Positions 1,976-15,338 of a stretch of DNA of 64,000 nt are shown here, piece by piece. Positions within the stretch are counted from its first letter, which is position 1, and each line of letters starts with the position of its first letter. Below the pieces are notes generated by a model, which worked only from the letters and a program-made list of their open reading frames with translations, was not told the DNA's origin and ran no database searches. The stretch lies in contig OZ059897.1 in NCBI GenBank assembly GCA_964057225.1, forward strand, positions 13,206,001 to 13,270,000. The letters run 5' to 3'. Both the position numbers and the translations under genes were made by a program. This DNA is from Auanema rhodensis (taxonomy: Eukaryota > Animalia > Nematoda).

Positions 1976-3669
1976 ATGTAAATGGAATTCTCATTTTCTC
2001 TGTATAGAATGAGTATGTATTTGTGTATACTCAAATTTTTTCTCGCTTCTGCTGTTTTTACAGACTCTTTCCGGTTAATGATCTCCAAAAATACCTTCAG
2101 AAAGAGTTTAGCACACAATATTGCATTTTCTTTCATAACATCTCTCTTGCATCTGAATCTTTTATCCGTCTTTAATTCTTTTCTCCTCTTTTTTTGTGAT
2201 CTTCGCCTATCGGGAAAAATAGCATTTTTTCTGCATAGATGGCTAGATTTAAAAATATATTTATGCATCCAGAACGTTTTTAGTGAATGAATAGTTTCGC
2301 AAGTCTTTTTCTTCTTCACATACATATGGTCAGATACACATACACACAAACAGAATAAAAATGTTGAAATAGAAGACCTAGCCCACTGCTATGTCGATTG
2401 TCTTCTTCATCAACCATCTTTCTAAGAGCTCTACAAAGCTTTCACTCAGTATTTTTCTCATGCACAATTCGGTGGAGCTTCGTCTTGTATTGATTTCCGA
2501 CCGGTTACCTCAGAAGCACTGTCGCGTCCTTGTCGCGTTTCAGGTCGTGTGCTAGTGCTCTCTTCTTAGTAGACGACAGACACTATTTTGTCAATCAATT
2601 GATTGACATTGGGAAACATTAAGTTATAAATGGATAGAGTTGTCCACATATCCAAAATTTCGACAAGGAAAAGGTGGCTAAAAAAATAGGCTGAGTAATA
2701 GTAGTCGGGATCTCGGAGTCGGCCAAGGACAGGAGGCTGACCTAGTGACAGCATTTGCGGTTAGTCTTTCAACTGAGATCATATATGAGTTACAATATCA
2801 TCTGTTAGAATTTAAAATAAGATTAGTCGAAGAGGATTATGAGGGTGAAAGAGATTTATGGAAATTCTAGGAGATATATTCATCATGACAATACAATCGA
2901 ACGTATCACGTATTACAAAACAACCGACGTCATTTCCGGTACGTAAAAACCGTGCACCGGTTGATCATACAGACATCAAGCATTAAACTTAAATGTTTCT
3001 CCAACGTGTTCATGATTTTTGATATTTAATATCTTGATATTAGCTTTATGTGTTATACTTATTTCCTATACCCACCTCTGACTTCATGCACTTAAACAAC
3101 TGTTATCTCTTGCTATCTCAACGGCACTCACTTAGTCGTCCTCGTGTGTCCTTTCTCACTGAAGCTTTTCCCTACTTTCTTCTCGATATTTAGCCCACTC
3201 TTTTCTATATTTCCTATGCTTTCTGTTCTTCAGCTGTTCCTCTCATTTCGTGCTTTTCTGTTCTTTTCTCTCCAACATTCTCAACAACAGTTCGCTGATT
3301 TCTCTCCGTCTACATAGCAGAGAGCAAGGGATGACTCTAAAACCAAGCAGTGGAGCTAATTCGATTTGATTGTCACTTTAAAGGAAAACCAATTTTGGCT
3401 TGAATCCAGGTGGGATCCTTCTGAAATATGCAAATTAGGGCCACGGTGATTACGGGGAGGACGATTATCTCGATCGATCACAGTCGACTGACCACCACAA
3501 CCACAACCAACAGATTTTACACACTGGCCATCTAGACCCGAGTGTGGAATGAGAGAGTACACCACAATGAGAGGGTTGAGCGCGCAGGGGGGCAGGGATG
3601 GAGGGGCACATGAAGTGGTCGGCGGAAAGTTTCGAGTGTGGCTGCCGGCTGAACTGTTGCTAGCCCTGG

Positions 3670-3677
3670 ATTTCAGG
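3670..3677 (+). promoter_or_regulatory. Probable SL trans-splice acceptor (TTTCAG/G) for mel-11
   Basis: Nematode-consensus acceptor ~95 nt upstream of ATG 3771, no ATG between the two. Confidence 0.45.
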
Positions 3678-3770
3678 CTGCGTTCGTGGTCTTCTTCTTC
3701 TTCACCGTCATCTTCATCATCTTCTTCATTTCCTGATTCTGTGTCCTTTCCGTGTGTCTGAAAACGGGAT

Positions 3771-6700
3771 ATGGTCAGAGACGACGATGATATTGATGCT
3801 GAAGAAGCTGGCAAAACTGCCCATATGCTTCAAGTTAAGCAGCTCATTTCCAAAAATGTTATAACCAAAAGAAAGGTATGTGATAGTTCTTATTTTATAT
3901 TTTTTCTAATTTCATAAGCTTGCTTGGGTCACTTTTTAATTAATTTTAATTGTTATTTTATACTTATTTTCTTTTACTATAATAAAAGCCATATGTTAAA
4001 GTCGCGCAAATTCTAATGTTTTGATTAAAAACATATGTTTCTAAGCTAAGAAACTCGGAAACGAATCATTTTATTTTTCTTGCTTTCTAATTATCTTTGA
4101 ATCAGCCAACGGAAAAGTTCATGCAATTTTGTTTCTTGTACCACTTATAATGAATCATTCGATCAGCGCAGAACCTGCACATTCATTTTTTTATTTTTTT
4201 TGTCTTAACAGTACATGTGTTGTTTTATTTCTATATATGTATTTTATATTATGCTACATATTCCGAGCATGTTTTGGTTTCATTCCCCTAGTATCAAATC
4301 ATCACACGATTTGTTCACCTTTTGCATTTCTTTTTCTTTAACTTAAGCATCTCGAATACAATATTTTGAATTTAATTTCTCTTGTTTGCCAACGATTTCT
4401 ACAGTGAATTAATTTGTTCTGTTTGTTTTTAAGCATTACTAACATATTTAAAAGTATACTTCTCAATTTTCCCCGTTCGTTATCATTTGGCAAGAAATTG
4501 TTCTTCATTTTTTTTTAATAATTCAAAATATTTTTGAATTTTGATTGTCCTTGCTTACTTATGACGTTCTTACCCTGTTTTCGTTTTCAAAAAAATGTGT
4601 TCACACCTTTTTCTTTTCTGTTCATTCATTGGTGACTAAGGTTAGATCGAATTTTCGCTGAGCACAGCTGAGATTCTGGAAAAATTGTCGTCGTTTGCGT
4701 GGTTTTCAAGTCTTCTGTACGTAAGCTGAACGGTCAACAGGGCGATTAGCTTAACAAAGCTGCTTTTTCTTGTCTAAATTGCGCGTTTCTATCATCTGGG
4801 CATGTATGAAGACAAAGTTTCAAAAGACTAGTCGATAATTACATAATCTTTATAGTTAAAGTCGTCATTTACCAAGTTATAGTAATTGTGCATTTTGTAG
4901 GAACAGCTACATCGTTGGCAATCCAGTGAAATGAATGGCGAATCAGTATTACGACGGAAGAAACCTCGAGTACAATTTCAGGTCGGATTTCTTCTGTTAG
5001 GATGAAATTTTCATATACTTTACTCTTCAGGATAGCGATATATTTTTAAGTGCTTGTATGTCTGGAGATGAGGAAGAAGTAGAAGATTTGTTAGAAAAGG
5101 GAGCCGATATTAACACAAGTACAATTGACGGTCTTACAGCTCTACATCAGGTTTTTTTGCTTATGTTTCGTTTCATTATTGCTTTATTTCAGTCGGTGAT
5201 AGATAGTAAACCAGAGATGGTTCGATTTTTATGTGAGAAAGGAGCTGATGTCAATGCTCAGGATAACGAAGGCTGGACACCTCTTCATGCTGCTGCGTGT
5301 TGTGGTAACTTAGCTATAGTTAAGTACTTATGCCAGAACGGAACTGATATGGCCATTATTAATAGGTTTCCTTATATCACATGATATTTTATAAATAAAT
5401 CATTTTTTAGCGACAAAGAGCTAGCATTAGATCTTGCCGATGACGAAGCTTGTCGTGAATACTTAGATTACGAGTATAAGCGACAATCTATTGATCCGGA
5501 TCAGTGTAGGAATGTTGAGCTAACAACGATGATGAGAGATGCTCAGAAATGGTTGAAAGAAGGCAAATACAAGTAATATTGGATGTTATTTCTAATTTTC
5601 TAATTTGCTTCTAATTCAGTGATTCACCTCATGCTCAAACTGGTGCTTCGGCTTTACATGTAGCAGCAGCAAAAGGTTATATTCAGCTTCTTGAACTACT
5701 ACTCTCTGCTGGTGGAAATGCTAAATGCCAAGACAAGGTTAGTCTTAATTTCCGCCTTAAACTTAATTTCCTATTCAGGATGGCTGGACTCCTCTTCACG
5801 CTGCTGCTCATTGGGCTGAGCGTGACGCATGTAAGATTTTAATCGAAAATGGCGGTAGCATACATGATTTAAGTTTTGCGGTATGGTAGAAAATATGTGT
5901 TTATATGACAAATGATATAATTCAGGGTCAAAATGTGTTAACTGTTGCTGATAGTAAGATTGTTGAGTACTTAGAAGATTTAGAACGAACTGTTGAAAAG
6001 AAACGTGTATCATCTTCACCGTCTACTACAAGTGTACTGCAGGTTCATTGATTCTATGAGTTTTATCTTTATATACTTATGTTTAGGAGAAGAATGTTCG
6101 CGTAGGTGATGACCAAAACGGAAATGAATATAAACGCGAATATCGGGAAGCAAGCAGTGAAAATGAATCTGTTTATACTGTTCCCAAGTGCCCAAAACTA
6201 TCTGAAAAGTCGCCCTCTGTGGAATCGCAGTCTTCACAGGATTCCCGGAGGTCAGTAGAAGAAGAAATATCTCCCGAGAAGTCAGAGAGTGAAGCTACAT
6301 GCAGCGCTAGGTTTGTTGCAAATACTATCTTATTTCAAAACGTATATTTATATAAATTTTTAGGTCTTCCGAGGAACCTTCTATCTCAGGATCTGAAAGA
6401 TCCACTTCATTAGATAAACCATTGCAAAATCATCGGTCATTTGCTTCAAGTAATAGCACAATTTCTAGTTCTCCTACAACTGCTAGTTCCATAAGTGCTG
6501 TATCAACTAGGACATCTGTAATATTCTTTTTTATCAAAATAATTAAATAGTTTTCTCTTTTTAGTCTAATAGTTCTTCATTGCAAAGTGGAGATCAACAT
6601 ATTGCTTGTACAGTACCTATTCCTAGGCCATTACAACAACCAAACTCATGGATTAACCGAGGAGTTCAACTCGTTACCAGGTAAATTTTTTTGAAAGATT

Positions 6701-9700
6701 TTGTATTATTTCTTTCTAGTTTGTCTACTTTAAATTATATGCTTCTCTTCATTTAAGAAAATTTATTTTAAGATTTCAATAGTATATATATATATTCTTG
6801 TGCACTGAGATATAGAGTTCTTGAACTTTTAATACATTATAATATAGATCAATGCTCGTGATTTCAAAAAAAAAACACAAATATTTTTGTAATAAGCTTT
6901 GTGAAGAAAATAGCACATAATTTTTGAACTTTGTCATTGGTGCTTGTGCGATTAATTGAATGTTCGATGAAATTCCTGATACTTTTACAGGTCGGCGAGT
7001 ACATCTTCCGGCTCAGGAAGCAGAAACTCTGAGGGATCTGTGTCTGCTTCATCTCAAGCATCTGTTAGTTCTCCTAGTGCATCAGGATCTCCTGCCCCTG
7101 CCTATTCTGCTAACAGCAGCCTTCTACATAATAAAACATTGTAAGTTTTTTATATTATCATGTTTGGAATGTTTTTTTCTGTTATTTTGCGTTAGTGCAT
7201 GCTCTATGTTTGTTCAGTTTCGAGCCTTCTGTGCAACGTTCTACGTCTATTCCTTCTAATTTGCCTTGGCTGTCGTTATGTCGTAGTGGTAGCAATTCAC
7301 AAGTTCGTTCACCTGCTGATGGCCCAGCTTTTCCTCAATACTTGAGTCAAAACCGGGTATCAGCATTCCGACCTCCTATAAAGGTGTCAAACTCACCACC
7401 TGTTTCGGAATTACCACGCGGCTTACAGCCACAACATTTAAGTCCCCAAAAGATGAGGTCCGTGTTTCGTTTATGTGATGTGTGTTGAATGCTTTTGTAG
7501 TGTTATGTTATCTTTATCTAGCTAAGTCTTTTTAGACCTTGGTTGTCCAGTACAGTAAATGAAAGTGAAGCTGAACGAAGAACAACTGCTCGCCTTCAAA
7601 GACAAAATAGGCGCTCAACTCAAGGAGTTACAAAGGTATCGTATTACGTTTGGAGTGTTTTTGGAGCTCTAAACATATAATTATTCATTTTATTCATATA
7701 GGAGCAACTGGAAGAAGCTAGTCGGATTGCTTCTGAAGAATCTGCTCGTCGGCGCAATTCAGCTAATACCCATTCTTCGGTGGGCTCCAGCGAAACATCT
7801 CAACGTGACTGTGTAAGTTTCGAGATTATGATTATTTTCTTTCATTATATTGTTCATCTCATCCGGGAAAATTGTTTTGCGGTTCTGCCATGACCTTTTA
7901 TAATTTTAATTGCTGGTCTCGTTCTCTATCCCTTCGACATTTCAAGAAAGAGATAGGAGACGTTCATCATCGCTGTAGGGTGTTCATGATAAACTAGGGA
8001 ACAGAGAGCGAAAGAGTAAAGGGAAAGATTAGGATGACCTAATAATACAGAAATTATTAGAAAATCACAACTAATGACTTACGCGAATTGTGGCGAGAGC
8101 TGTATTTTAATGGATCGGGATGTTGGCAAACATTGTGAAATCTGGGGGTTTATATTATATATGAACAAATCATTATATATTTTCTTAACAACAGTGTAAC
8201 AAATATAAAAATAGCACTCTTAATGAAATAGTTTTATAGTACAGTTTTCATATTATAGATTTTGGCTCGTCTTGCATCTGAAGAACAAGATTCAACTTCA
8301 ATATCCGAAAGCTCCGAACCTCAAACGTCAAGTGTGCGGATATTACCTGATGGCAGCGTTCAAGGTTAGTAGCATGTAAATTAGTCATTCTTCATTTTTC
8401 AATTCTTGAAGACTTGGATCGAAGTAGTTCTGATAGATCCTCACCTCATACAACGAATGCTTCAATCTACTTATATAAAAACTCTTCTAATACATCCACA
8501 AGTACAACTCCATCATCTACTGGTTTACGACGTAAAAGCCAGGTTAGTGGCCTGCTATTTTCTCATCTTTTATCTTATTTCAAGTTTCCTTTACTTTTTT
8601 TTTTACTTTTATCTGAATATTAAACATTTTTTTGCCTTGCATATGTTTTGCTAGTTTTTAGTTTTTGTGTTGCTCAGTTTAATTTTTGAAAGCTATTCTT
8701 ATTTTGGGCTTTTGTTTTTGTTTGTTTTCGAGTTTTGCTCTTAACAGGGTGTCCCGTTGTCACGCTCCAATCGCCGTGGTACTGGCCCGGTTCTGCCTGA
8801 GGATTTGCATGCTGCTGTTGCCAGTGTCAGTATTAGTTCTCCACCGGATTCTGTTCCTGCACCTTCAACTCCAACATCAGCTCCACCGCCGCCTCTTCGT
8901 TATGCAACAAATAACGGAGCTTCCTTTAGTAGACCTATAATAACTCCGTTTTCAAGAACTGATGCTCGTTTGAATCCTTCGAGCATTTACTCTTCGACAA
9001 CTTCATCATCAAATGATAGAACAATAGGGCAAGAGTTGAAATCATCGTCGGTACCTCCATCTACTTCAACGGTATGTCCTTTAGCTTGTGGTTTTTGATG
9101 TTTGCATGTTTATTGTTTCTCTATGTTTGATTTGTTTCTTTTTTACTGCTTTTTTTGATTTCGACTTAGTTTTAACTCAATACCTAATCCTGTTTATATT
9201 CTTGCAAGTTCACCCTATGTGATGATTCTAGGTTGCTTTCTGTCTTTTGATTGCTCTTTAACTTCTTTGCTCTCTGGCCGTTAGCACAATGGCGCCGAGA
9301 ACAAAATTTCTTTGTCCACTTATCTTTTTTCGTTAGAGTATCCCTCATGTCATCTTCATCAACCTCTTCTTTTTGTTAGAGCAGGTAGATTTTTGCAGTC
9401 AACGCCCATCTATCTTTTCATATCTTTAAACTAAACTCACTTCATTCTTATGTATTCACCTTATTCTACTAGTTATTCATCTTCGAGATCTAGCTCTCGG
9501 CTACATTGTTCTCCACGTCGTTTAGGCGACGTGAGATCGAAATCCGTAGGCCCCCCATCCGTATTCAGAAGTACCAGTTCTGATAGATTTTTTAGAAGTT
9601 CAAATGCTTTAATTGATTCTAAATTAGGTGTAAGTATCACAAGTCTTCTCTATGCTATTTAATTAACAGCATGAATATCTTTCATTTTGTAACTAATATT

Positions 9701-10910
9701 ATAATTTCCACTATTCCTACCTTTCTATGAAACCGAAATATTTCAGAGCATGAGAACAGTTTTAAAAACTAAAGATATGTTTAAATTATTTTTTTAGCCG
9801 AGCAGTATAACAACGTCAGGATTGCGTAGTGCTGTTGTTGCTCCATCGCCAAGTAGCAGGTTCACTTCTAAAGCTACTGTTTCTCCTCTTCATCCGTCAC
9901 CTTCTTCAGCTTTTACAGCTTCTTCCAATGTTTGTATATGTTTTATACACATCCTTAGAATTCTCGGTCAAACGTATGATATTTTTACACTTGAATTTCA
10001 GGCTTACTCATCTCGTCCTTCGGAAACCAACTTAAATTATAAAGCTTTGTATGAAAAAGAGAAGTCTGAATCAGAAAGGCTACGAAGAGAGCTGGAAGAT
10101 ATGAAAAAACTGCAAGATGTATGAGTTTCATATTTATTTTCTATTATTAACATTGTCCTGATTTAGAGCTCTAGTTTATCAGTTACTCGTGCTGGAACTT
10201 CAAGATTCAGAAATGGATCTCCTGCTAGTTCAATACCTCTTAGTAAATCTTCTTCTGGAGCTTCCGTAGATGATAATGAGAGAAGATCATTAGAACGAAA
10301 AATATCCGATCTCGAGTTACAAGTCAAGGTATGCTGATGTTTTTCTAATTGTATTCATCATTATCTACCATCTACGTTTTTTTTGATAAATTATCGAAAA
10401 CATTAAATTTTAGGAGCAGAATGCTCTAGCTTCTGAGAATGCACGTCTTCGCTCGGAGAACGAAGCGTTGGTTCGCGTTTTAGCCAAAATCAGTCGACCG
10501 ATCGCCAACTAATTCTCCTTCTATAAAAGATATTTTCAAAAGTGGGGATTGTATGCGCTTTACTTAACATTTTATTTCTAAAAATCTGTGCCTAACGTGG
10601 GATCCCATTTTCACAAAGTTGTGCTTAACTAAAAAACTTCAACCTAGCTCAGTTATTATAAAAACCCTCGAATCCCGTTTTGATGTCCGCGTTTATTAAC
10701 ATGTCTTTTCCTGTGAGATCGAAATGATTTAAAAAACTAACATTACATGGGCAAATCAAGCTTGTATTTTTCTTGCGCATGCTCCTTTTTACTTTTAAAA
10801 CTCTAATTATAATTTTTTTATAGGCTGTTAACCAACTGCGAATGGAAAATCAACGCTTAAAGGAGGAGAATGGAGCTCTAGTACGTGTGATTTCAAAAAT
10901 GAGAATCTAG
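3771..10910 (+). CDS. mel-11: Myosin phosphatase regulatory subunit MYPT1/PPP1R12 orthologue; ~23 exons, alternative last exons 10414-10512 or 10824-10910
   Basis: MyPhoNE motif RK|EQLHRW across exons 3771-3875/4901-4981, PP1-docking RVQF, ankyrin repeats (DGLTALHQ, EGWTPLHAAACCG, TGASALHVAAAKGY, DGWTPLHAAAHW), inhibitory phosphosite motifs RRSTQGVT (7536-7635) and RRGTGPV (8749-9071), coiled coil NYKALYEKEKSE, ERRSLERKISDLE and terminal zipper ENQRLKEENGALVRVISKM. Confidence 0.95.
9450..9629 (+). CDS. mel-11: Putative internal alternative first exon of mel-11 (60 codons, Ser/Arg-rich)
   Basis: ATG 9450, open to a consensus phase-0 donor GGT|GTAAGT at 9630 that joins in frame to exon 9798; in-frame TAA at 9432; acceptor TTTTGCAG ends at 9398. 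Confidence 0.6.
10414..10512 (+). CDS. mel-11: mel-11 proximal alternative terminal exon (variant leucine zipper)
   Basis: TTTTAG acceptor, phase 0 with donor at 10329; EQNALASENARLRSENEALVRVLAKISRPIAN*, paralogous to the distal last exon. Confidence 0.85.
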   Translation, partial: EQNALASENARLRSENEALVRVLAKISRPIAN

Positions 10911-13900
10911 TCTCTTTTTCCATTTTTTTTTATTCTTCGGTCCCCTTTTTGGACCTTTCATATCCAGAGGCACAAGTCTTGGTTCCATCTGTCGCACGAT
11001 TCCCCACTTTTCTCTGAAACAGAGTTGCTGTTATCATATATATCTTGTGTATGTATCAGTTTTCGTTTTGCTCATTTTACCATCTATGTACATTCGAGTT
11101 GCTTTGCATTTTGATTTGTACATGATTGTCTTCTCTAATCTAGCTATTCTAGATCCAAATTTCGGTGGCCTTATTGATCAGTTCCCAAACTGTGCAATTG
11201 TATAATATTTCACTACCCTTTACTTCTCTTAATTTTTAGGCAGAATATGATATGTAATCACCTTCTCATGTGTTTTCTACTGCCCTCTAGCGACCCTTTT
11301 TACCCTACTCCAGCTCATTTTCTGTTCTTAAACTATATTATATATTACCAAACTGATTAACTATCTGACTGGATAGGTTGATTTTTAAAAAATTTGGATG
11401 TTATCATTGACATATGTTTGCGGCTGTTTTTTCTTTAATGTTATAAGCCATTTACCTTTTTTTCTGGCCGTCTGTTATGTTCATCCCAAGTTCTTCCAAC
11501 CTTCTTCTCCTTTCCGAAATAGCTGAACAATTATCAGATTCTTGGCAGAGTATGTATAATATATATATATAACTATATATAACTATATATATCTAAATGT
11601 GATTTCGGATGTCTTCGCGGATTCTATTGACGATTGAATGTATTATCTTTGTTCTTTCTTTTGACGAATGCTTTTGAAGGTTTTGTCAAGATGAACTCAT
11701 AGCTATATAAAAGTACATATTTGAACACTTCTTATTTGTATGTTCATAATTTCGTTTTCTCCTAATTCTCTAGGTTTATGGCGTAAATGTTGTTTCAATC
11801 GTGATTTGGCTAGTCGTAACGGGGTTAGAATTCAGTTTTGCGATCAACAAGAACAAGTAGGGCTAATAACTTGAATATTCGGAACATAAAAAATACGTTT
11901 GTAAATATAATTGTTCATTCTAAATGTGAAATTCGTAGTTGTGCTTTTTCAAAAAAATGTTTTATTGCGACGAACTTTGAGCCTTATAGGTTATAAATAC
12001 ACGAGATTACTTTCATGAGTCAGCAACATCTTACATCATCTATGTATGTTTGATAATAAAGAACTGATACACAAAAAAAAAGAACTAAATTAGCTATTTC
12101 AGCGCATTTTATTATAGCAACACGGTTATAATAGATCAGTGATCTATTTTGATTTAAATAGAAATTTATTTTATGAATAATAGATCAGATAGTTAACAAA
12201 TTATGAACCATAGTCTGGATTGGAAGACAGCTCATCCTACAGTAACAATGTGTTTTCAATCAATCTTTCTTGACTATTGATAGTCTAACCATCGTTCGCT
12301 ATCAACACATTGCGGAAGAAAGAAAGTTCGGAAGTCCTATGGGTATACGAAATAGCATTTTCTGTGAAGAGATTTCAATGAGTCATGATGAAACAGCTGT
12401 TCTATCACCGGTTGACAACGAGGTCTTTTGTCACTTGTACATCGTATATAAGCCACCATGTATGTATAAACAATAGAATCATGAAATAAGAGCATGATTA
12501 TCCTCTATCGTAGACATATAATATTGACAAGAATTCTCTCATTGCTAAAAATGGTCATTGCTAAGTTTCAGCATGTTGTGCTAAAAGAATAATCTGATTT
12601 TTATGTTTTTTTAAATGTAATTGAAAATGTATTTCAACATATTTCAATATATTTGTTATCATAAATATGTATGTGCTCAGGTATATAAATGAGTTTTTCT
12701 TATTTCTCTATTTGTTCAACTTTTAATGTCTCGTAATAATAATAGGAAAAACATATATTTATTTAAATTCTGATTTTTTATAAATTTTTATTCAAAATAT
12801 TTTAATATCCGTGTTTCAAATATTTGTTTCTTCTCTGAAAAAAAAATATTTTTTTTCCTGAAATCAAATTATAACTAATCAAACAAAAAATTGTATGATT
12901 CAGTTGAAATACAATGTATATTCTAGATATTTATTTTGTATATGTTTTTACATAACTGTATTTTGAACTTATTTTATTTAAAATACAGAAAATATCATTT
13001 TTTTAAAAGTTATATTGAAGCTTATTTATATTTATATCTCTTATCATTTTAGTGGTGAAAGAGATATGTTGAAAAATCCACAATGAAAAATCAATTTTCA
13101 ACCCTTTGTAGAATATAAAATAGCTTTTTTTTGTGAATTGCTAAATAGAAAATAAAAATTATTAACTAACACAGTTATTTATATCTCAAAAATAGTTTTG
13201 CCCTATAAGCATTGCTGTTTCTTTTCAAAACACAGTTTTTGTGTAGCTGATTTTTGATTTTTCTGCATTTACAATACACATGATTTCCATTGATATCAAT
13301 AGACATGTTTGATGATTAAGACTATTTCGAATCCAGAAGCTTCCATCGTCTCTCCATATAAATGGCTCTGCATGAACGAGATGGTTCAGTTTGCTGGAAT
13401 AGGGAAATTCATCTATATGTCATAAAACATATAATTCACTTTTCTGACCTTCAAATTTTCTGAATTAGTCTCTCTACTGTTACTTATTCTCACGCCAATC
13501 ATCTTATTCCTCATATTACCGCATAGCTATTATCCTTACCTTCATTCAATTACTATCAAACAGTGCCTGTTATTCTTTCAAATTGGGGTTAATCCTATAA
13601 CACCGTCAAAGGTTGTTTTCCTAGAATTCGATGAACCTATCTAGAGTACCATTTGACCTAAAATGTACCTTTTCTTGTCTATTAACCGATCAGAACCGCT
13701 TGTTATTGGTAATTATCACGTCTCGAACAAACTACCTACCTGCCCATATACACTTCATTTCTAGCTGTGTCGGCGGGCGGAATGGTTGCATTCACAAGTT
13801 TTCTTTTTTCCAGTATGTTTTAGAGATCATCTGACCTATTTTTGTGTTTCACATAACACGGCAAAGCAACTTTTCAGTATAAAAATGTACTGGAGTGTCT

Positions 13901-14475
13901 GGAAAGAATTTTTTTGTCATATTTTTCGTTCTTTGAATGAAACGTTATTCTCATATTGTTTGTTGATATCTCGTTTTCCAGAAAGTTATGATGAGTCATG
14001 AATCAAAATTTTACTCTGTTCGTATGGTCATTGAGTCATTGAGTCATTCAATCAATAGATCATTTTGCTTCCATTTTTATCTTATTTCTGGCCTTCTGTA
14101 ATAATTCCGGTTATATCCATTCTATTACTATAACTAGTACTTGTTTATTTTCCTGAAATCAATCTGTGAGAATAACCGATCATTTCATTCTTTCTTTCAA
14201 TATTTTCTGGTAAAATTTCGAAATAATTATTTAAAAATAAGGGATTAAACGTTATTGTTGAGATTATTCGATGGGATGATATCATTTTCTCTATTACATC
14301 TCCGAGGTTTTTTGACTATTTCTATTCAATACCTTTTTTATGGTCGACCTAGATTCCTTTTTTTTTTATTTTTCTTCTTCTTTGATAAAGACCAATTCAT
14401 GAAATATGATTTTTGTTTCAGTTTTCGATATGTCTTTCTTTCGTTTATGCTTATTCTAAATATTATAATTCTAGT

Positions 14476-15338
14476 ATGAAGACTATCTGCGTATTGTTGG
14501 CTGTGGTTGCCGTAGCTTTTTCTGCACCTCGTTCTAAGCGTTTCACTGTTGGGACTATTGCTGTGTCAGCTCCAATAGCTGGAGGAAATGTCGGATGTGT
14601 TGTTACCGTAAGTGATACGTTCTAATTTATTTTAAATTATTTGTTTTGTTTAGGCAAATACCTTGTACATCAATGGTTTGAAGCAAAGAGAATTGACCAC
14701 TGAAGAGCAAAGCGAACTTGAGACCTACCAGTCTGCCTTCGGAAAGTACAAAGACGAATTAAAGACTTTGGTTGCCGAGAAGCATAAGGCTCTTCAAGCT
14801 AGAATCAACGGAAAGAAGGGATCTGCTGTTGAATCTGTTTCTTCAGTCGCTACTACCAAGCCTCAACCACCAAAAAGACCATCCTTCTGCCAGGCTAACG
14901 ATACTACCCAATATGTTTTCGATGGATGCATGGTTCAAGGAAACAAGGTCTACGTCGGACGTGACTATGCTCGTGATCTGACTTCAGAAGAGGTAGAGCA
15001 ACTCAAGGTTTATGACGAGAAGCAAACTGCCTACAGTAAGCAAGTTCAAGAGCACGTCAAGAAGGTTTAAACATAATATAGTAACGTAATATTTAATCCA
15101 TGACGTTTCCAGCAAGTAAGCGAAATCCTCGGAACATCCGAAATCTTCTCTGCTTTATTGGGCGAAATTTCTGGAAGAGACCAAGATGCTGAACCAGAGG
15201 TTAGAAATGACCTGAAAACAAATTATATTCAAAGTTGTTTAGGCTACCACTCGCTCTTCATCTGCTGCTACCACTGACGGTTCTAACATCTTACTTGAAG
15301 CCCCAGTTGCTCCAAACTTCTGTACAGCTATCCTTTAA
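14476..15338 (+). CDS. Secreted aspartyl protease inhibitor (Pepsin-I3 / Ov33 / API family), 4 exons
   Basis: Signal peptide MKTICVLLAVVAVAFSA, RSKR site, two repeats GCVVTANTLYINGLKQRELT..E and GCMVQGNKVYVGRDYARDLTSEE, PPKRPSFC and C-terminal PVAPNFCTAIL*; biased codon use suggests high expression. Confidence 0.92.

What the first reader, a model, noticed from the sequence alone, without database searches (positions are those of the whole stretch)
10414..10910. Duplicated, mutually exclusive leucine-zipper last exons in MYPT/mel-11
Seen: two phase-0 terminal exons, each with its own stop: EQNALASENARLRSENEALVRVLAKISRPIAN* and AVNQLRMENQRLKEENGALVRVISKMRI*. They align at protein level but are diverged in DNA, implying old duplication under selection. 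Known: the MYPT1 zipper binds PKG and other partners; vertebrates switch zipper on/off using a small frameshifting exon. Inference: here the switch is between two different zippers (K-E-E-N-G to R-S-E-N-E, last heptad M to I plus tail), which could rewire partner choice; with the internal start this gives at least four isoforms.
Basis: partly seen in the sequence, partly recalled or inferred. Interest (0 to 1): 0.75.

Follow-up and report, generated by a model that had tools for sequence, protein, structure and literature searches.

The report
Two alternative zipper exons in MYPT
The myosin-phosphatase targeting gene (MYPT/mel-11) of this Auanema-like nematode ends in two old, duplicated exons, each encoding a different version of the protein's final leucine zipper. 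The pair is conserved in Pristionchus and hookworm relatives but missing from Caenorhabditis, and RNA data are still needed to show when each is used.

Summary
After the donor at 10328 there are two phase-0 exons with AG acceptors, each with its own stop: 10414-10512 and 10824-10910. They align without gaps (14/28 residues; 11 of the 14 shared residues use different codons). Both match the same last segment of Pfam PRKG1_interact (PF15898).

The proximal exon lies at the same place in the genomic DNA of Auanema sp. JU1783, Pristionchus fissidentatus, Necator and Nippostrongylus. It also forms the C-terminus of annotated protein models in six strongylid genera.

It is absent from the last intron of C. 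briggsae, C. bovis and Mesorhabditis. No C. elegans MEL-11 protein found in the database carries it, which would explain why it has not been studied.

Between the window and JU1783 the proximal exon is 95% identical in DNA, against 76-82% for its coding neighbours. Its synonymous sites are unusually constrained, a pattern typical of regulated alternative exons.

The zipper core (a, d, g positions, both Asn at a) is kept. Surface positions, the Gly, and the tail differ.

Not shown: transcription in this species, whether the proximal exon ends by polyadenylation or is a stop-carrying cassette, and any change of binding partner. The one read-laying run allowed failed, so there is no read evidence. 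No paper describing the pair was found.

The parts
3771..10910 (+). MYPT/MEL-11 orthologue, start codon to the stop of the distal terminal exon
   Evidence: tblastn of the Auanema sp. JU1783 protein P0032 tiles 3771-10907. RVQF motif in exon 4901-4981 and ankyrin repeats at 5001-5381 and 5615-5737. RRSTQGVT site at about 7600.
9981..10118 (+). Antepenultimate exon, start of the PRKG1_interact coiled coil; donor GAT|gtatga at 10118
   Evidence: PF15898 profile positions 1-26; sequence of the donor.
10167..10328 (+). Penultimate exon (54 codons, phase 0 at both ends); shared donor AAG|gtatgc at 10328/10329
   Evidence: PF15898 positions 43-73; hits nematode MYPT proteins; 75.9% DNA identity to JU1783.
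10329..10413 (+). 85-nt intron before the proximal exon
   Evidence: 50% identity to JU1783.
10414..10512 (+). Proximal zipper exon: 32 codons plus TAA; variant last four heptads followed by an SRPIAN tail
   Evidence: 31/32 aa and 94.9% DNA identity to JU1783; orthologues in Pristionchus, Necator and Nippostrongylus.
10513..10582 (+). Conserved stretch downstream of the proximal stop: either a short 3'UTR or splice-control region. Holds a PAS-like TATAAA at 10522 and candidate donors aaa|GTGGGG (10542) and att|GTATGC (10551)
   Evidence: 71% identity, against about 46% in the rest of the intron; hexamer and GT scan; the GT at 10542 is kept in JU1783 (aaa|GTATGA), while the TATAAA and the GTATGC are not.
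10583..10823 (+). Rest of the interval before the distal acceptor (poorly conserved; TATAAA at 10657)
10824..10910 (+). Distal zipper exon: 28 codons plus TAG; the canonical MYPT zipper, nearly invariant across Rhabditina
   Evidence: 44.2 bits to PF15898 positions 75-99; the same C-terminus in Caenorhabditis, Pristionchus, Mesorhabditis, Heterorhabditis and strongylids.

Best explanation
The last coding exon of this nematode's MYPT/mel-11 gene was duplicated in tandem before the split of Diplogastridae, Auanema and Strongylida. Both copies have been kept as alternative C-terminal exons. From the common donor at 10328 the pre-mRNA can join either of two exons. Joining the proximal exon (10414) gives a protein ending in a variant four-heptad zipper plus an S-x-P tail, closed by that exon's own TAA. 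Skipping it and joining the distal exon (10824) gives the canonical, almost invariant MYPT zipper. Because the proximal exon carries an in-frame stop and has no in-frame donor before it, the two zippers cannot both be translated in this species. Shown here: the homology, position and phase of the exons, their conservation, the purifying selection on them, and the use of the proximal exon in gene models of other nematodes. Inferred: (a) actual alternative use in this species; (b) the mode of termination, either a poly(A) site in 10513-10823 or a stop-carrying cassette spliced on to 10824; (c) the functional consequence. The a, d and g positions and both Asn residues at a positions are the same in the two versions, so parallel dimer geometry is probably retained. 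The exposed b, c and f positions differ, the helix-weakening Gly is replaced by Glu or Ala, and the tail differs. My reading is a change in zipper stability and in surface-binding partners or regulation, rather than loss of the zipper.
For: Anatomy and homology. Orthologous proximal exon in the last intron, phase 0, with an AG acceptor and a stop after 32-35 codons in four of the five species (Nippostrongylus reads on to 56 codons): JU1783 L003:9284-9382, P. fissidentatus L007:22614-22712, Necator L009:22691-22798, Nippostrongylus L010:29573 onward. Proximal-type C-termini in annotated proteins of Necator, Ancylostoma ceylanicum, Ostertagia, Cooperia, Heligmosomoides and Nippostrongylus. In Necator, one locus tag (RB195_020765) has both a proximal-type and a distal-type isoform. 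The two exon types are separated by one branch (93/92; 94% of bootstrap trees). Selection: pN/pS is 0.08-0.62 for proximal and 0.03-0.18 for distal. Synonymous constraint typical of regulated alternative exons appears in two independent species pairs: pS 0.17 against 0.63 (window/JU1783) and 0.27 against 0.95 (Necator/Nippostrongylus). The proximal exon is 94.9% identical in DNA to JU1783, among the three best 99-nt windows of the 8-kb gene, whose overall identity is 64%; Fisher p = 6e-5 against the flanking coding exons. Heptad comparison. No ncRNA alternative.
Against: There is no transcript evidence for this species. The only runs that hold the stretch look like DNA (0.8 of the words, introns included), and read laying could not be run. 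The JU1783 gene model uses only the distal exon. The strongylid isoforms are automatic predictions and disagree on the 3' end of the exon: read-through to a stop, a 95-nt frameshifting cassette, or an in-frame cassette. No canonical AATAAA follows the proximal stop, and the nearest TATAAA is not conserved in JU1783. Any functional difference between the zippers is untested.
Confidence: 0.8

Rival explanations
1. The proximal exon is a stop-carrying cassette exon rather than a true last exon. It would be spliced in between 10328 and 10824 using a donor shortly after its stop (for example 10542), leaving the distal exon as 3'UTR. This is formally the same logic as the vertebrate MYPT1 E24 switch. 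The protein outcome is identical to the main explanation; only the RNA mechanism differs.
For: The ends of the Necator P0029 (...SRL) and Ostertagia P0027 (...SRV) models fit a 95-nt cassette using the donor CCG|GTTAGA, which is conserved between Necator and Nippostrongylus. That splice shifts the frame into an immediate TGA at bases 5-7 of the distal exon. The GT at window 10542 is conserved in JU1783 as aaa|GTATGA. No conserved poly(A) hexamer follows the proximal stop.
Against: The window donor aaa|GTGGGG is weak. The A. ceylanicum, Cooperia and H. polygyrus models read through to their own stops, as a terminal exon would. A stop followed by a spliced 3'UTR may be exposed to NMD. No reads are available.
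Confidence: 0.35
2. The proximal exon is a decaying, unused duplicate (pseudo-exon), and the strongylid isoforms that carry it are prediction artefacts.
For: There is no RNA evidence here. The JU1783 annotation omits it. Caenorhabditis and Mesorhabditis do without it.
Against: The open frame, AG acceptor, phase and heptad core are retained in lineages as far apart as Pristionchus, Auanema and Strongylida. pN/pS is below 1. DNA identity to JU1783 is 95%, far above the roughly 46-50% seen in the introns.
Confidence: 0.05
3. The conserved block 10414-10582 is a non-coding element (an intronic splicing or polyadenylation regulator, or an ncRNA) that only happens to be an open frame.
For: Synonymous sites are unusually conserved, and conservation runs about 70 nt past the stop.
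Against: Between distant species the DNA is saturated at synonymous sites (pS 0.63-0.97) while the heptad pattern and the RVLAK motif persist at protein level. It matches PF15898 at E = 4e-6. No Rfam family comes near its gathering score, and folding gives z = -0.96.
Confidence: 0.05

Closest known systems
Vertebrate MYPT1 (PPP1R12A) E24 switch giving LZ+ and LZ- isoforms
   Same: Alternative splicing sits immediately upstream of the zipper-coding last exon of the same gene family and decides which C-terminus the myosin-phosphatase targeting subunit carries (PMC9367544). The Necator and Ostertagia models even use a frameshifting cassette.
   Different: E24 is a 31-nt (or 13-nt) exon unrelated to the zipper, and it removes the zipper by frameshift. 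Here the alternative exon is a paralogue of the zipper exon with its own stop, so a variant zipper replaces the canonical one. The origin is independent and nematode-specific.
Annotated isoforms of strongylid MYPT genes (Necator americanus RB195_020765: XP_064045101.1/KAK6738866.1 against the distal isoform; Ancylostoma ceylanicum Y032_0404g839; Ostertagia KAK6014398.1; Cooperia KAK6055218.1; Nippostrongylus Q1695_012937)
   Same: The exon pair is orthologous and lies in the same intron position and phase.
   Different: They are automatic gene models with no description. Their tails differ (S-x-P-x-SRL...), and one Nippostrongylus model joins both zippers in frame (P0015), which the window's TAA forbids.
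Tandem-duplicated mutually exclusive or alternative exons (for example C. elegans let-2 exons 9/10, tropomyosin alternative C-terminal exons); from general knowledge
   Same: Adjacent homologous exons of similar length and the same phase, encoding interchangeable versions of one structural segment (here a coiled coil).
   Different: Each copy here carries its own stop codon, so the choice may be coupled to 3'-end formation rather than to pure splice-site competition.
C. elegans MEL-11 (C06C3.1; 968, 1016 and 1019 aa isoforms)
   Same: Orthologous gene. The distal zipper is identical over its last 21 residues except that the window ends MRI where C. elegans ends MTI.
   Different: No proximal-type isoform was found in the database. 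The exon is absent from the full last introns of C. briggsae and C. bovis and from the 435 nt of the C. elegans intron that could be read.

Membership tests
MYPT / PPP1R12 (MEL-11 orthologue) | N-terminal RVxF-type PP1c-binding motif just before the ankyrin repeats | tested here: met
   exon 4901-4981 encodes ...RRKKPRVQFQ, followed by DSDIFLSAC; 82% identical to the JU1783 protein.
MYPT / PPP1R12 (MEL-11 orthologue) | Ankyrin-repeat domain | tested here: met
   PF13637, PF00023 and PF12796 above their cut-offs in 5001-5381; PF00023 in 5615-5737.
MYPT / PPP1R12 (MEL-11 orthologue) | Central inhibitory phosphorylation motif RRSTQGVT | tested here: met
   ...RLQRQNRRSTQGVTK at about 7570-7640.
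MYPT / PPP1R12 (MEL-11 orthologue) | C-terminal PRKG1_interact coiled coil (PF15898) | tested here: met
   profile positions 1-26 (9981-10118), 43-73 (10167-10328), and 75-101 in either terminal exon. The exons were searched singly; only the distal one exceeds the 32.4-bit cut-off on its own (44.2). Full-length relatives score 85-105 bits.
Tandem-duplicated mutually exclusive exons | Neighbouring exons with the same phase, similar length and significant sequence homology | tested here: met
   phase 0 for both, 32 against 28 codons, 14/28 identity, 0 of 2000 shuffles reach the score, same Pfam segment.
Tandem-duplicated mutually exclusive exons | Transcripts contain one or the other exon, never both and never neither | not testable with these tools
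Co-translation is excluded by the TAA at 10510, but co-inclusion in the RNA is not.
Alternative last exon with its own poly(A) site | Functional cleavage/polyadenylation signal downstream of the proximal stop | tested here: inconclusive
   only TATAAA (10522, 10657) and ACTAAA (10628); the hexamer at 10522 is not conserved in JU1783.
Vertebrate E24-type LZ+/LZ- switch | A short cassette unrelated to the zipper whose inclusion shifts the frame and deletes the zipper | tested here: not met
   the alternative exon is itself a zipper paralogue with an in-frame stop, so both products keep a zipper.

The most novel reading that the evidence does not exclude
Rhabditine nematodes have, since before the Pristionchus/strongylid split, a regulated 'zipper-swap' in myosin phosphatase. 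It would retarget or retune MYPT (different coiled-coil partners, or different dimer stability) in particular tissues. This would be a solution convergent with the vertebrate LZ+/LZ- switch at the same point of the gene, and one that Caenorhabditis secondarily lost, which is why it has escaped study.
Probability: 0.3. Interest if true: 0.7.

Novelty: new variant of a known kind. Interest (0 to 1): 0.5.

Why it matters
The C-terminal zipper of MYPT is where the vertebrate protein's response to cGMP/PKG signalling is switched by splicing. Finding that a large nematode group keeps two interchangeable zippers at the same point suggests that isoform control of this interface arose more than once. 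It also offers a natural pair of zippers with the same core but different surfaces for asking what the zipper surface binds. The exon is present in hookworms and trichostrongyles (parasites) and in Pristionchus and Auanema (tractable free-living models), but absent from C. elegans. The standard model therefore cannot inform on it, while Pristionchus or Auanema genetics could.

Tried and rejected
Read evidence:
- The look-up of sequencing runs found only four runs of one study. They hold 0.8 of the words, introns included, so they are probably DNA.

Transcripts in protein databases:
- The word search with an Ancylostoma proximal-type C-terminus found only four genome-derived models and no Logan transcript.

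Metagenome scans:
- A profile of strongylid C-termini found no relative.
- A degenerate pattern for EN[EA]A[LM][VM]RVLAK found nothing.
- A first try with the 32-aa exon was too short for the tool.

C. elegans genomic locus:
- Look-ups returned only cDNA-like Logan contigs, nothing at all, or a contig ending 435 nt into the last intron. Absence in C. elegans itself therefore rests on annotated proteins plus that partial intron. C. briggsae and C. bovis supplied full introns.

Literature:
- Six searches found no description of alternative zippers in nematode MYPT.
- Wissmann 1997 and the two Dippold & Fisher 2014 papers are not held.

Other explanations and comparisons:
- ncRNA or RNA-structure explanations got no support from Rfam or folding.
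- PDB search gave only a weak match of both zippers to the Par-4 zipper 5FIY (E about 0.6).

Limits on what was searched:
Exons were searched one by one by reference.
- Clades outside Rhabditina could not be sampled.

Full report
**What is in the sequence.** The + strand of 3771-10910 holds a MYPT/MEL-11 orthologue.
- The Auanema sp. JU1783 protein P0032 tiles it exon by exon at about 80% identity.
- Exon 4901-4981 carries the PP1c-binding RVQF motif.
- 5001-5737 encodes ankyrin repeats.
- The inhibitory-site motif RRSTQGVT lies near 7600.
- The C-terminal coiled coil matches Pfam PF15898 (PRKG1_interact) in three successive pieces: profile positions 1-26 in exon 9981-10118, positions 43-73 in exon 10167-10328, and positions 75-101 in the terminal exon.

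**The two terminal exons.** Exon 10167-10328 ends in phase 0 at the donor AAG|gtatgc. Two exons follow it:
- 10414-10512: acceptor ttttag|G, 32 codons, TAA stop.
- 10824-10910: acceptor tatag|G, 28 codons, TAG stop.

**The two exons are homologous.**
- They align without a gap, with 14 of 28 residues identical. The BLOSUM62 score is 67, against 20 ± 4 for shuffles, and none of 2000 shuffles reaches it.
- DNA identity in register is only 40/84, and 11 of the 14 shared residues use different codons.
- Both hit the same end segment of PF15898: proximal at 27.7 bits (E = 4e-6), distal at 44.2 bits (E = 3e-11).

**The pair is old and conserved.** A search with the penultimate exon against protein representatives returned nematode MYPT proteins whose C-termini fall into two types.
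- The distal type (...QLRMENQRLKEENGALVRVISKMTI) is found in Caenorhabditis, Pristionchus, Mesorhabditis, Heterorhabditis, Auanema and strongylids.
- The proximal type (E-L-D-x-L-x-A-A-N-L-Q-L-R-x-E-N-A-A-M-M-R-V-L-A-K-L-S-x-P...) ends annotated proteins of Necator, Ancylostoma ceylanicum, Ostertagia, Cooperia, Heligmosomoides and Nippostrongylus.
- In Necator, the same locus tag (RB195_020765) has one isoform of each type.

I fetched genomic loci and found an orthologous proximal exon inside the last intron in each of the following. In every case it is phase 0 and has an AG acceptor. A stop follows after 32-35 codons in all but Nippostrongylus, whose frame reads on to 56 codons.
- Auanema sp. 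JU1783: L003:9284-9382, 31/32 residues identical to the window.
- Pristionchus fissidentatus: L007:22614-22712.
- Necator: L009:22691-22798.
- Nippostrongylus: L010:29573 onward.

A maximum-likelihood tree of 19 zipper peptides puts all proximal and all distal exons on opposite sides of a single branch (support 93/92; 94% of bootstrap trees). That fits one duplication before these lineages split.

**Where the exon is missing.**
- C. briggsae: no trace in the complete last intron, which is filled by a repeat.
- C. bovis: the intron is about 185 nt and holds nothing.
- Mesorhabditis: the intron is about 80 nt.
- C. elegans: I could read only the first 435 nt of the intron, with no hit. All C. 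elegans proteins found (968, 1016 and 1019 aa) and all other Caenorhabditis proteins found end in the distal type.

Pristionchus is usually placed outside the Caenorhabditis + Auanema + Strongylida group (general knowledge, not tested here). On that placement, the absences are secondary losses.

**Evidence for selection and for regulated use.**
- pN/pS is below 1 for every pair, at 0.08-0.62 for the proximal exon and 0.03-0.18 for the distal one. The proximal copy evolves faster in protein but is still constrained.
- Between the window and JU1783 the proximal exon is 94.9% identical in DNA. The penultimate exon is 75.9%, the distal exon 81.6%, and the introns 46-50%.
- It is among the three most conserved 99-nt windows of the 8-kb gene, whose overall identity is 64%.
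- The excess conservation lies at synonymous sites: pS is 0.17 in the proximal exon against 0.63 in the distal exon. The same contrast appears independently between Necator and Nippostrongylus (0.27 against 0.95).
- About 70 nt after the stop are also conserved, at 71%.
- Suppressed synonymous change plus conserved flanks is the usual signature of a regulated alternative exon. This is indirect evidence, not proof of use.
- An ncRNA reading finds no support. No Rfam hit comes near a gathering score, and folding gives z = -0.96.

**How the proximal exon ends.** This is open.
- In the window the TAA at 10510 is in frame, and no in-frame donor precedes it.
- Option 1: cleavage and polyadenylation occur downstream. 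Only TATAAA (10522, 10657) and ACTAAA (10628) are present, and the first is not conserved in JU1783.
- Option 2: the exon is a stop-carrying cassette using a donor such as aaa|GT at 10542, whose GT is conserved in JU1783.
- The strongylid models are split. A. ceylanicum, Cooperia and H. polygyrus read through to their own stop. The ends of the Necator (...SRL) and Ostertagia (...SRV) models fit a 95-nt cassette using a conserved donor CCG|GTTAGA, which shifts the frame into a TGA at bases 5-7 of the distal exon. That resembles the vertebrate E24 logic.
- Either way, the protein ends in the variant zipper.

**What the swap changes.** With the leucines placed at d positions, the two types compare as follows across all species sampled.
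- Shared: L5, L12 and (L/M)19 at d; both Asn at a (positions 9 and 16); E15 and V22 at g; A18; R21; K25.
- Diagnostic differences: position 1 (acidic against small or polar), position 7, position 10, position 14, position 17 (Gly in the distal type, Glu or Ala in the proximal type), position 23 (Ile against Leu), position 24 (Ser against Ala), position 26 (Met against Ile/Leu), and the tail (MTI or MRI against S-x-P-...).
- My inference is that parallel dimer geometry is kept, while helix stability and the exposed b, c and f surface and tail change. The switch would more likely retune stability or surface partners than abolish zipper function.
- The role of the MYPT1 zipper in PKG binding, and the E24 LZ+/LZ- switch, are taken from PMC9367544.

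**Comparison with what is known.** The closest known system is the vertebrate MYPT1 E24 switch. It sits at the same gene position and has the same kind of consequence, but it uses an unrelated 31-nt frameshifting cassette that deletes the zipper. Structurally, the pair meets the sequence criteria for tandem-duplicated mutually exclusive exons, namely adjacency, phase, length and homology. The expression criterion could not be tested. Six literature searches found no description of alternative zippers in nematode MYPT, and three likely sources are not held. The exon is, however, already present in public strongylid gene models, so the novelty lies in recognising the pair, its age and its loss, not in the first sighting of the sequence.

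**Limits and compliance.**
- The look-up of sequencing runs listed no RNA run.
I worked beside those places and sent none of their letters to any search tool afterwards.
- Two metagenome scans gave nothing.
- Nematode clades outside Rhabditina were not sampled.
- The 'internal start / four isoforms' part of the finding (also noted as s1-411900) was not tested.

**Verdict.** I rate it a new variant of a known kind, of moderate interest.

Noticed in passing
window 4685-4783: A 99-nt stretch inside intron 1 is 95% identical to Auanema sp. JU1783 and has stops in all three forward frames. It is a conserved non-coding element, perhaps an enhancer, a splice regulator or an alternative 5' exon.
   Followed up: partly
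window 3427-3525 and 3589-3687: Two stretches upstream of the ATG at 3771 are 93-96% identical to JU1783, more conserved than most coding exons. They are likely 5'UTR or promoter elements.
   Followed up: no
L010 (Nippostrongylus brasiliensis), protein P0015: One annotated isoform joins the proximal exon in frame to the distal exon (...SRLDQS|GLSQLRMEN...), giving two zippers in tandem. The window's TAA excludes this form here.
   Followed up: partly
L009:22780-22800 and L010:29660-29690: The donor CCG|GTTAGA inside the proximal exon is conserved between Necator and Nippostrongylus. Its use shifts the frame into a TGA at bases 5-7 of the distal exon, which matches the ...SRL and ...SRV ends of the Necator and Ostertagia models.
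   Followed up: partly
L006:26637-27303 (C. briggsae last intron): The intron is filled with a tandem repeat, seen as a recurring FLGHDLVFWISRS-like unit in translation. The repeat may have replaced the region where the proximal exon sits in other genera.
   Followed up: no
window 10911-11540: None of 15 common poly(A) hexamer variants occurs in the 630 nt after the distal stop, so the distal 3'UTR is long or uses an unusual signal.
   Followed up: no
window 14410-15067: An open frame with a signal-peptide-like start lies downstream of the gene. In JU1783 the neighbouring downstream gene carries Pfam Pepsin-I3 (PF06394), so local gene order may be shared.
   Followed up: no
both zipper exons (10414-10509, 10824-10907): The only solved structure that either zipper touches is the Par-4 (PAWR) coiled coil 5FIY, and the match is weak (E about 0.6).
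   Followed up: no
Haemonchus contortus proteins P0017-P0022: Two locus tags (V3C99_010742 and V3C99_010744) on one chromosome both encode MYPT proteins with identical C-terminal regions. This may be a local duplication or a split annotation. All listed isoforms are of the distal type.
   Followed up: no
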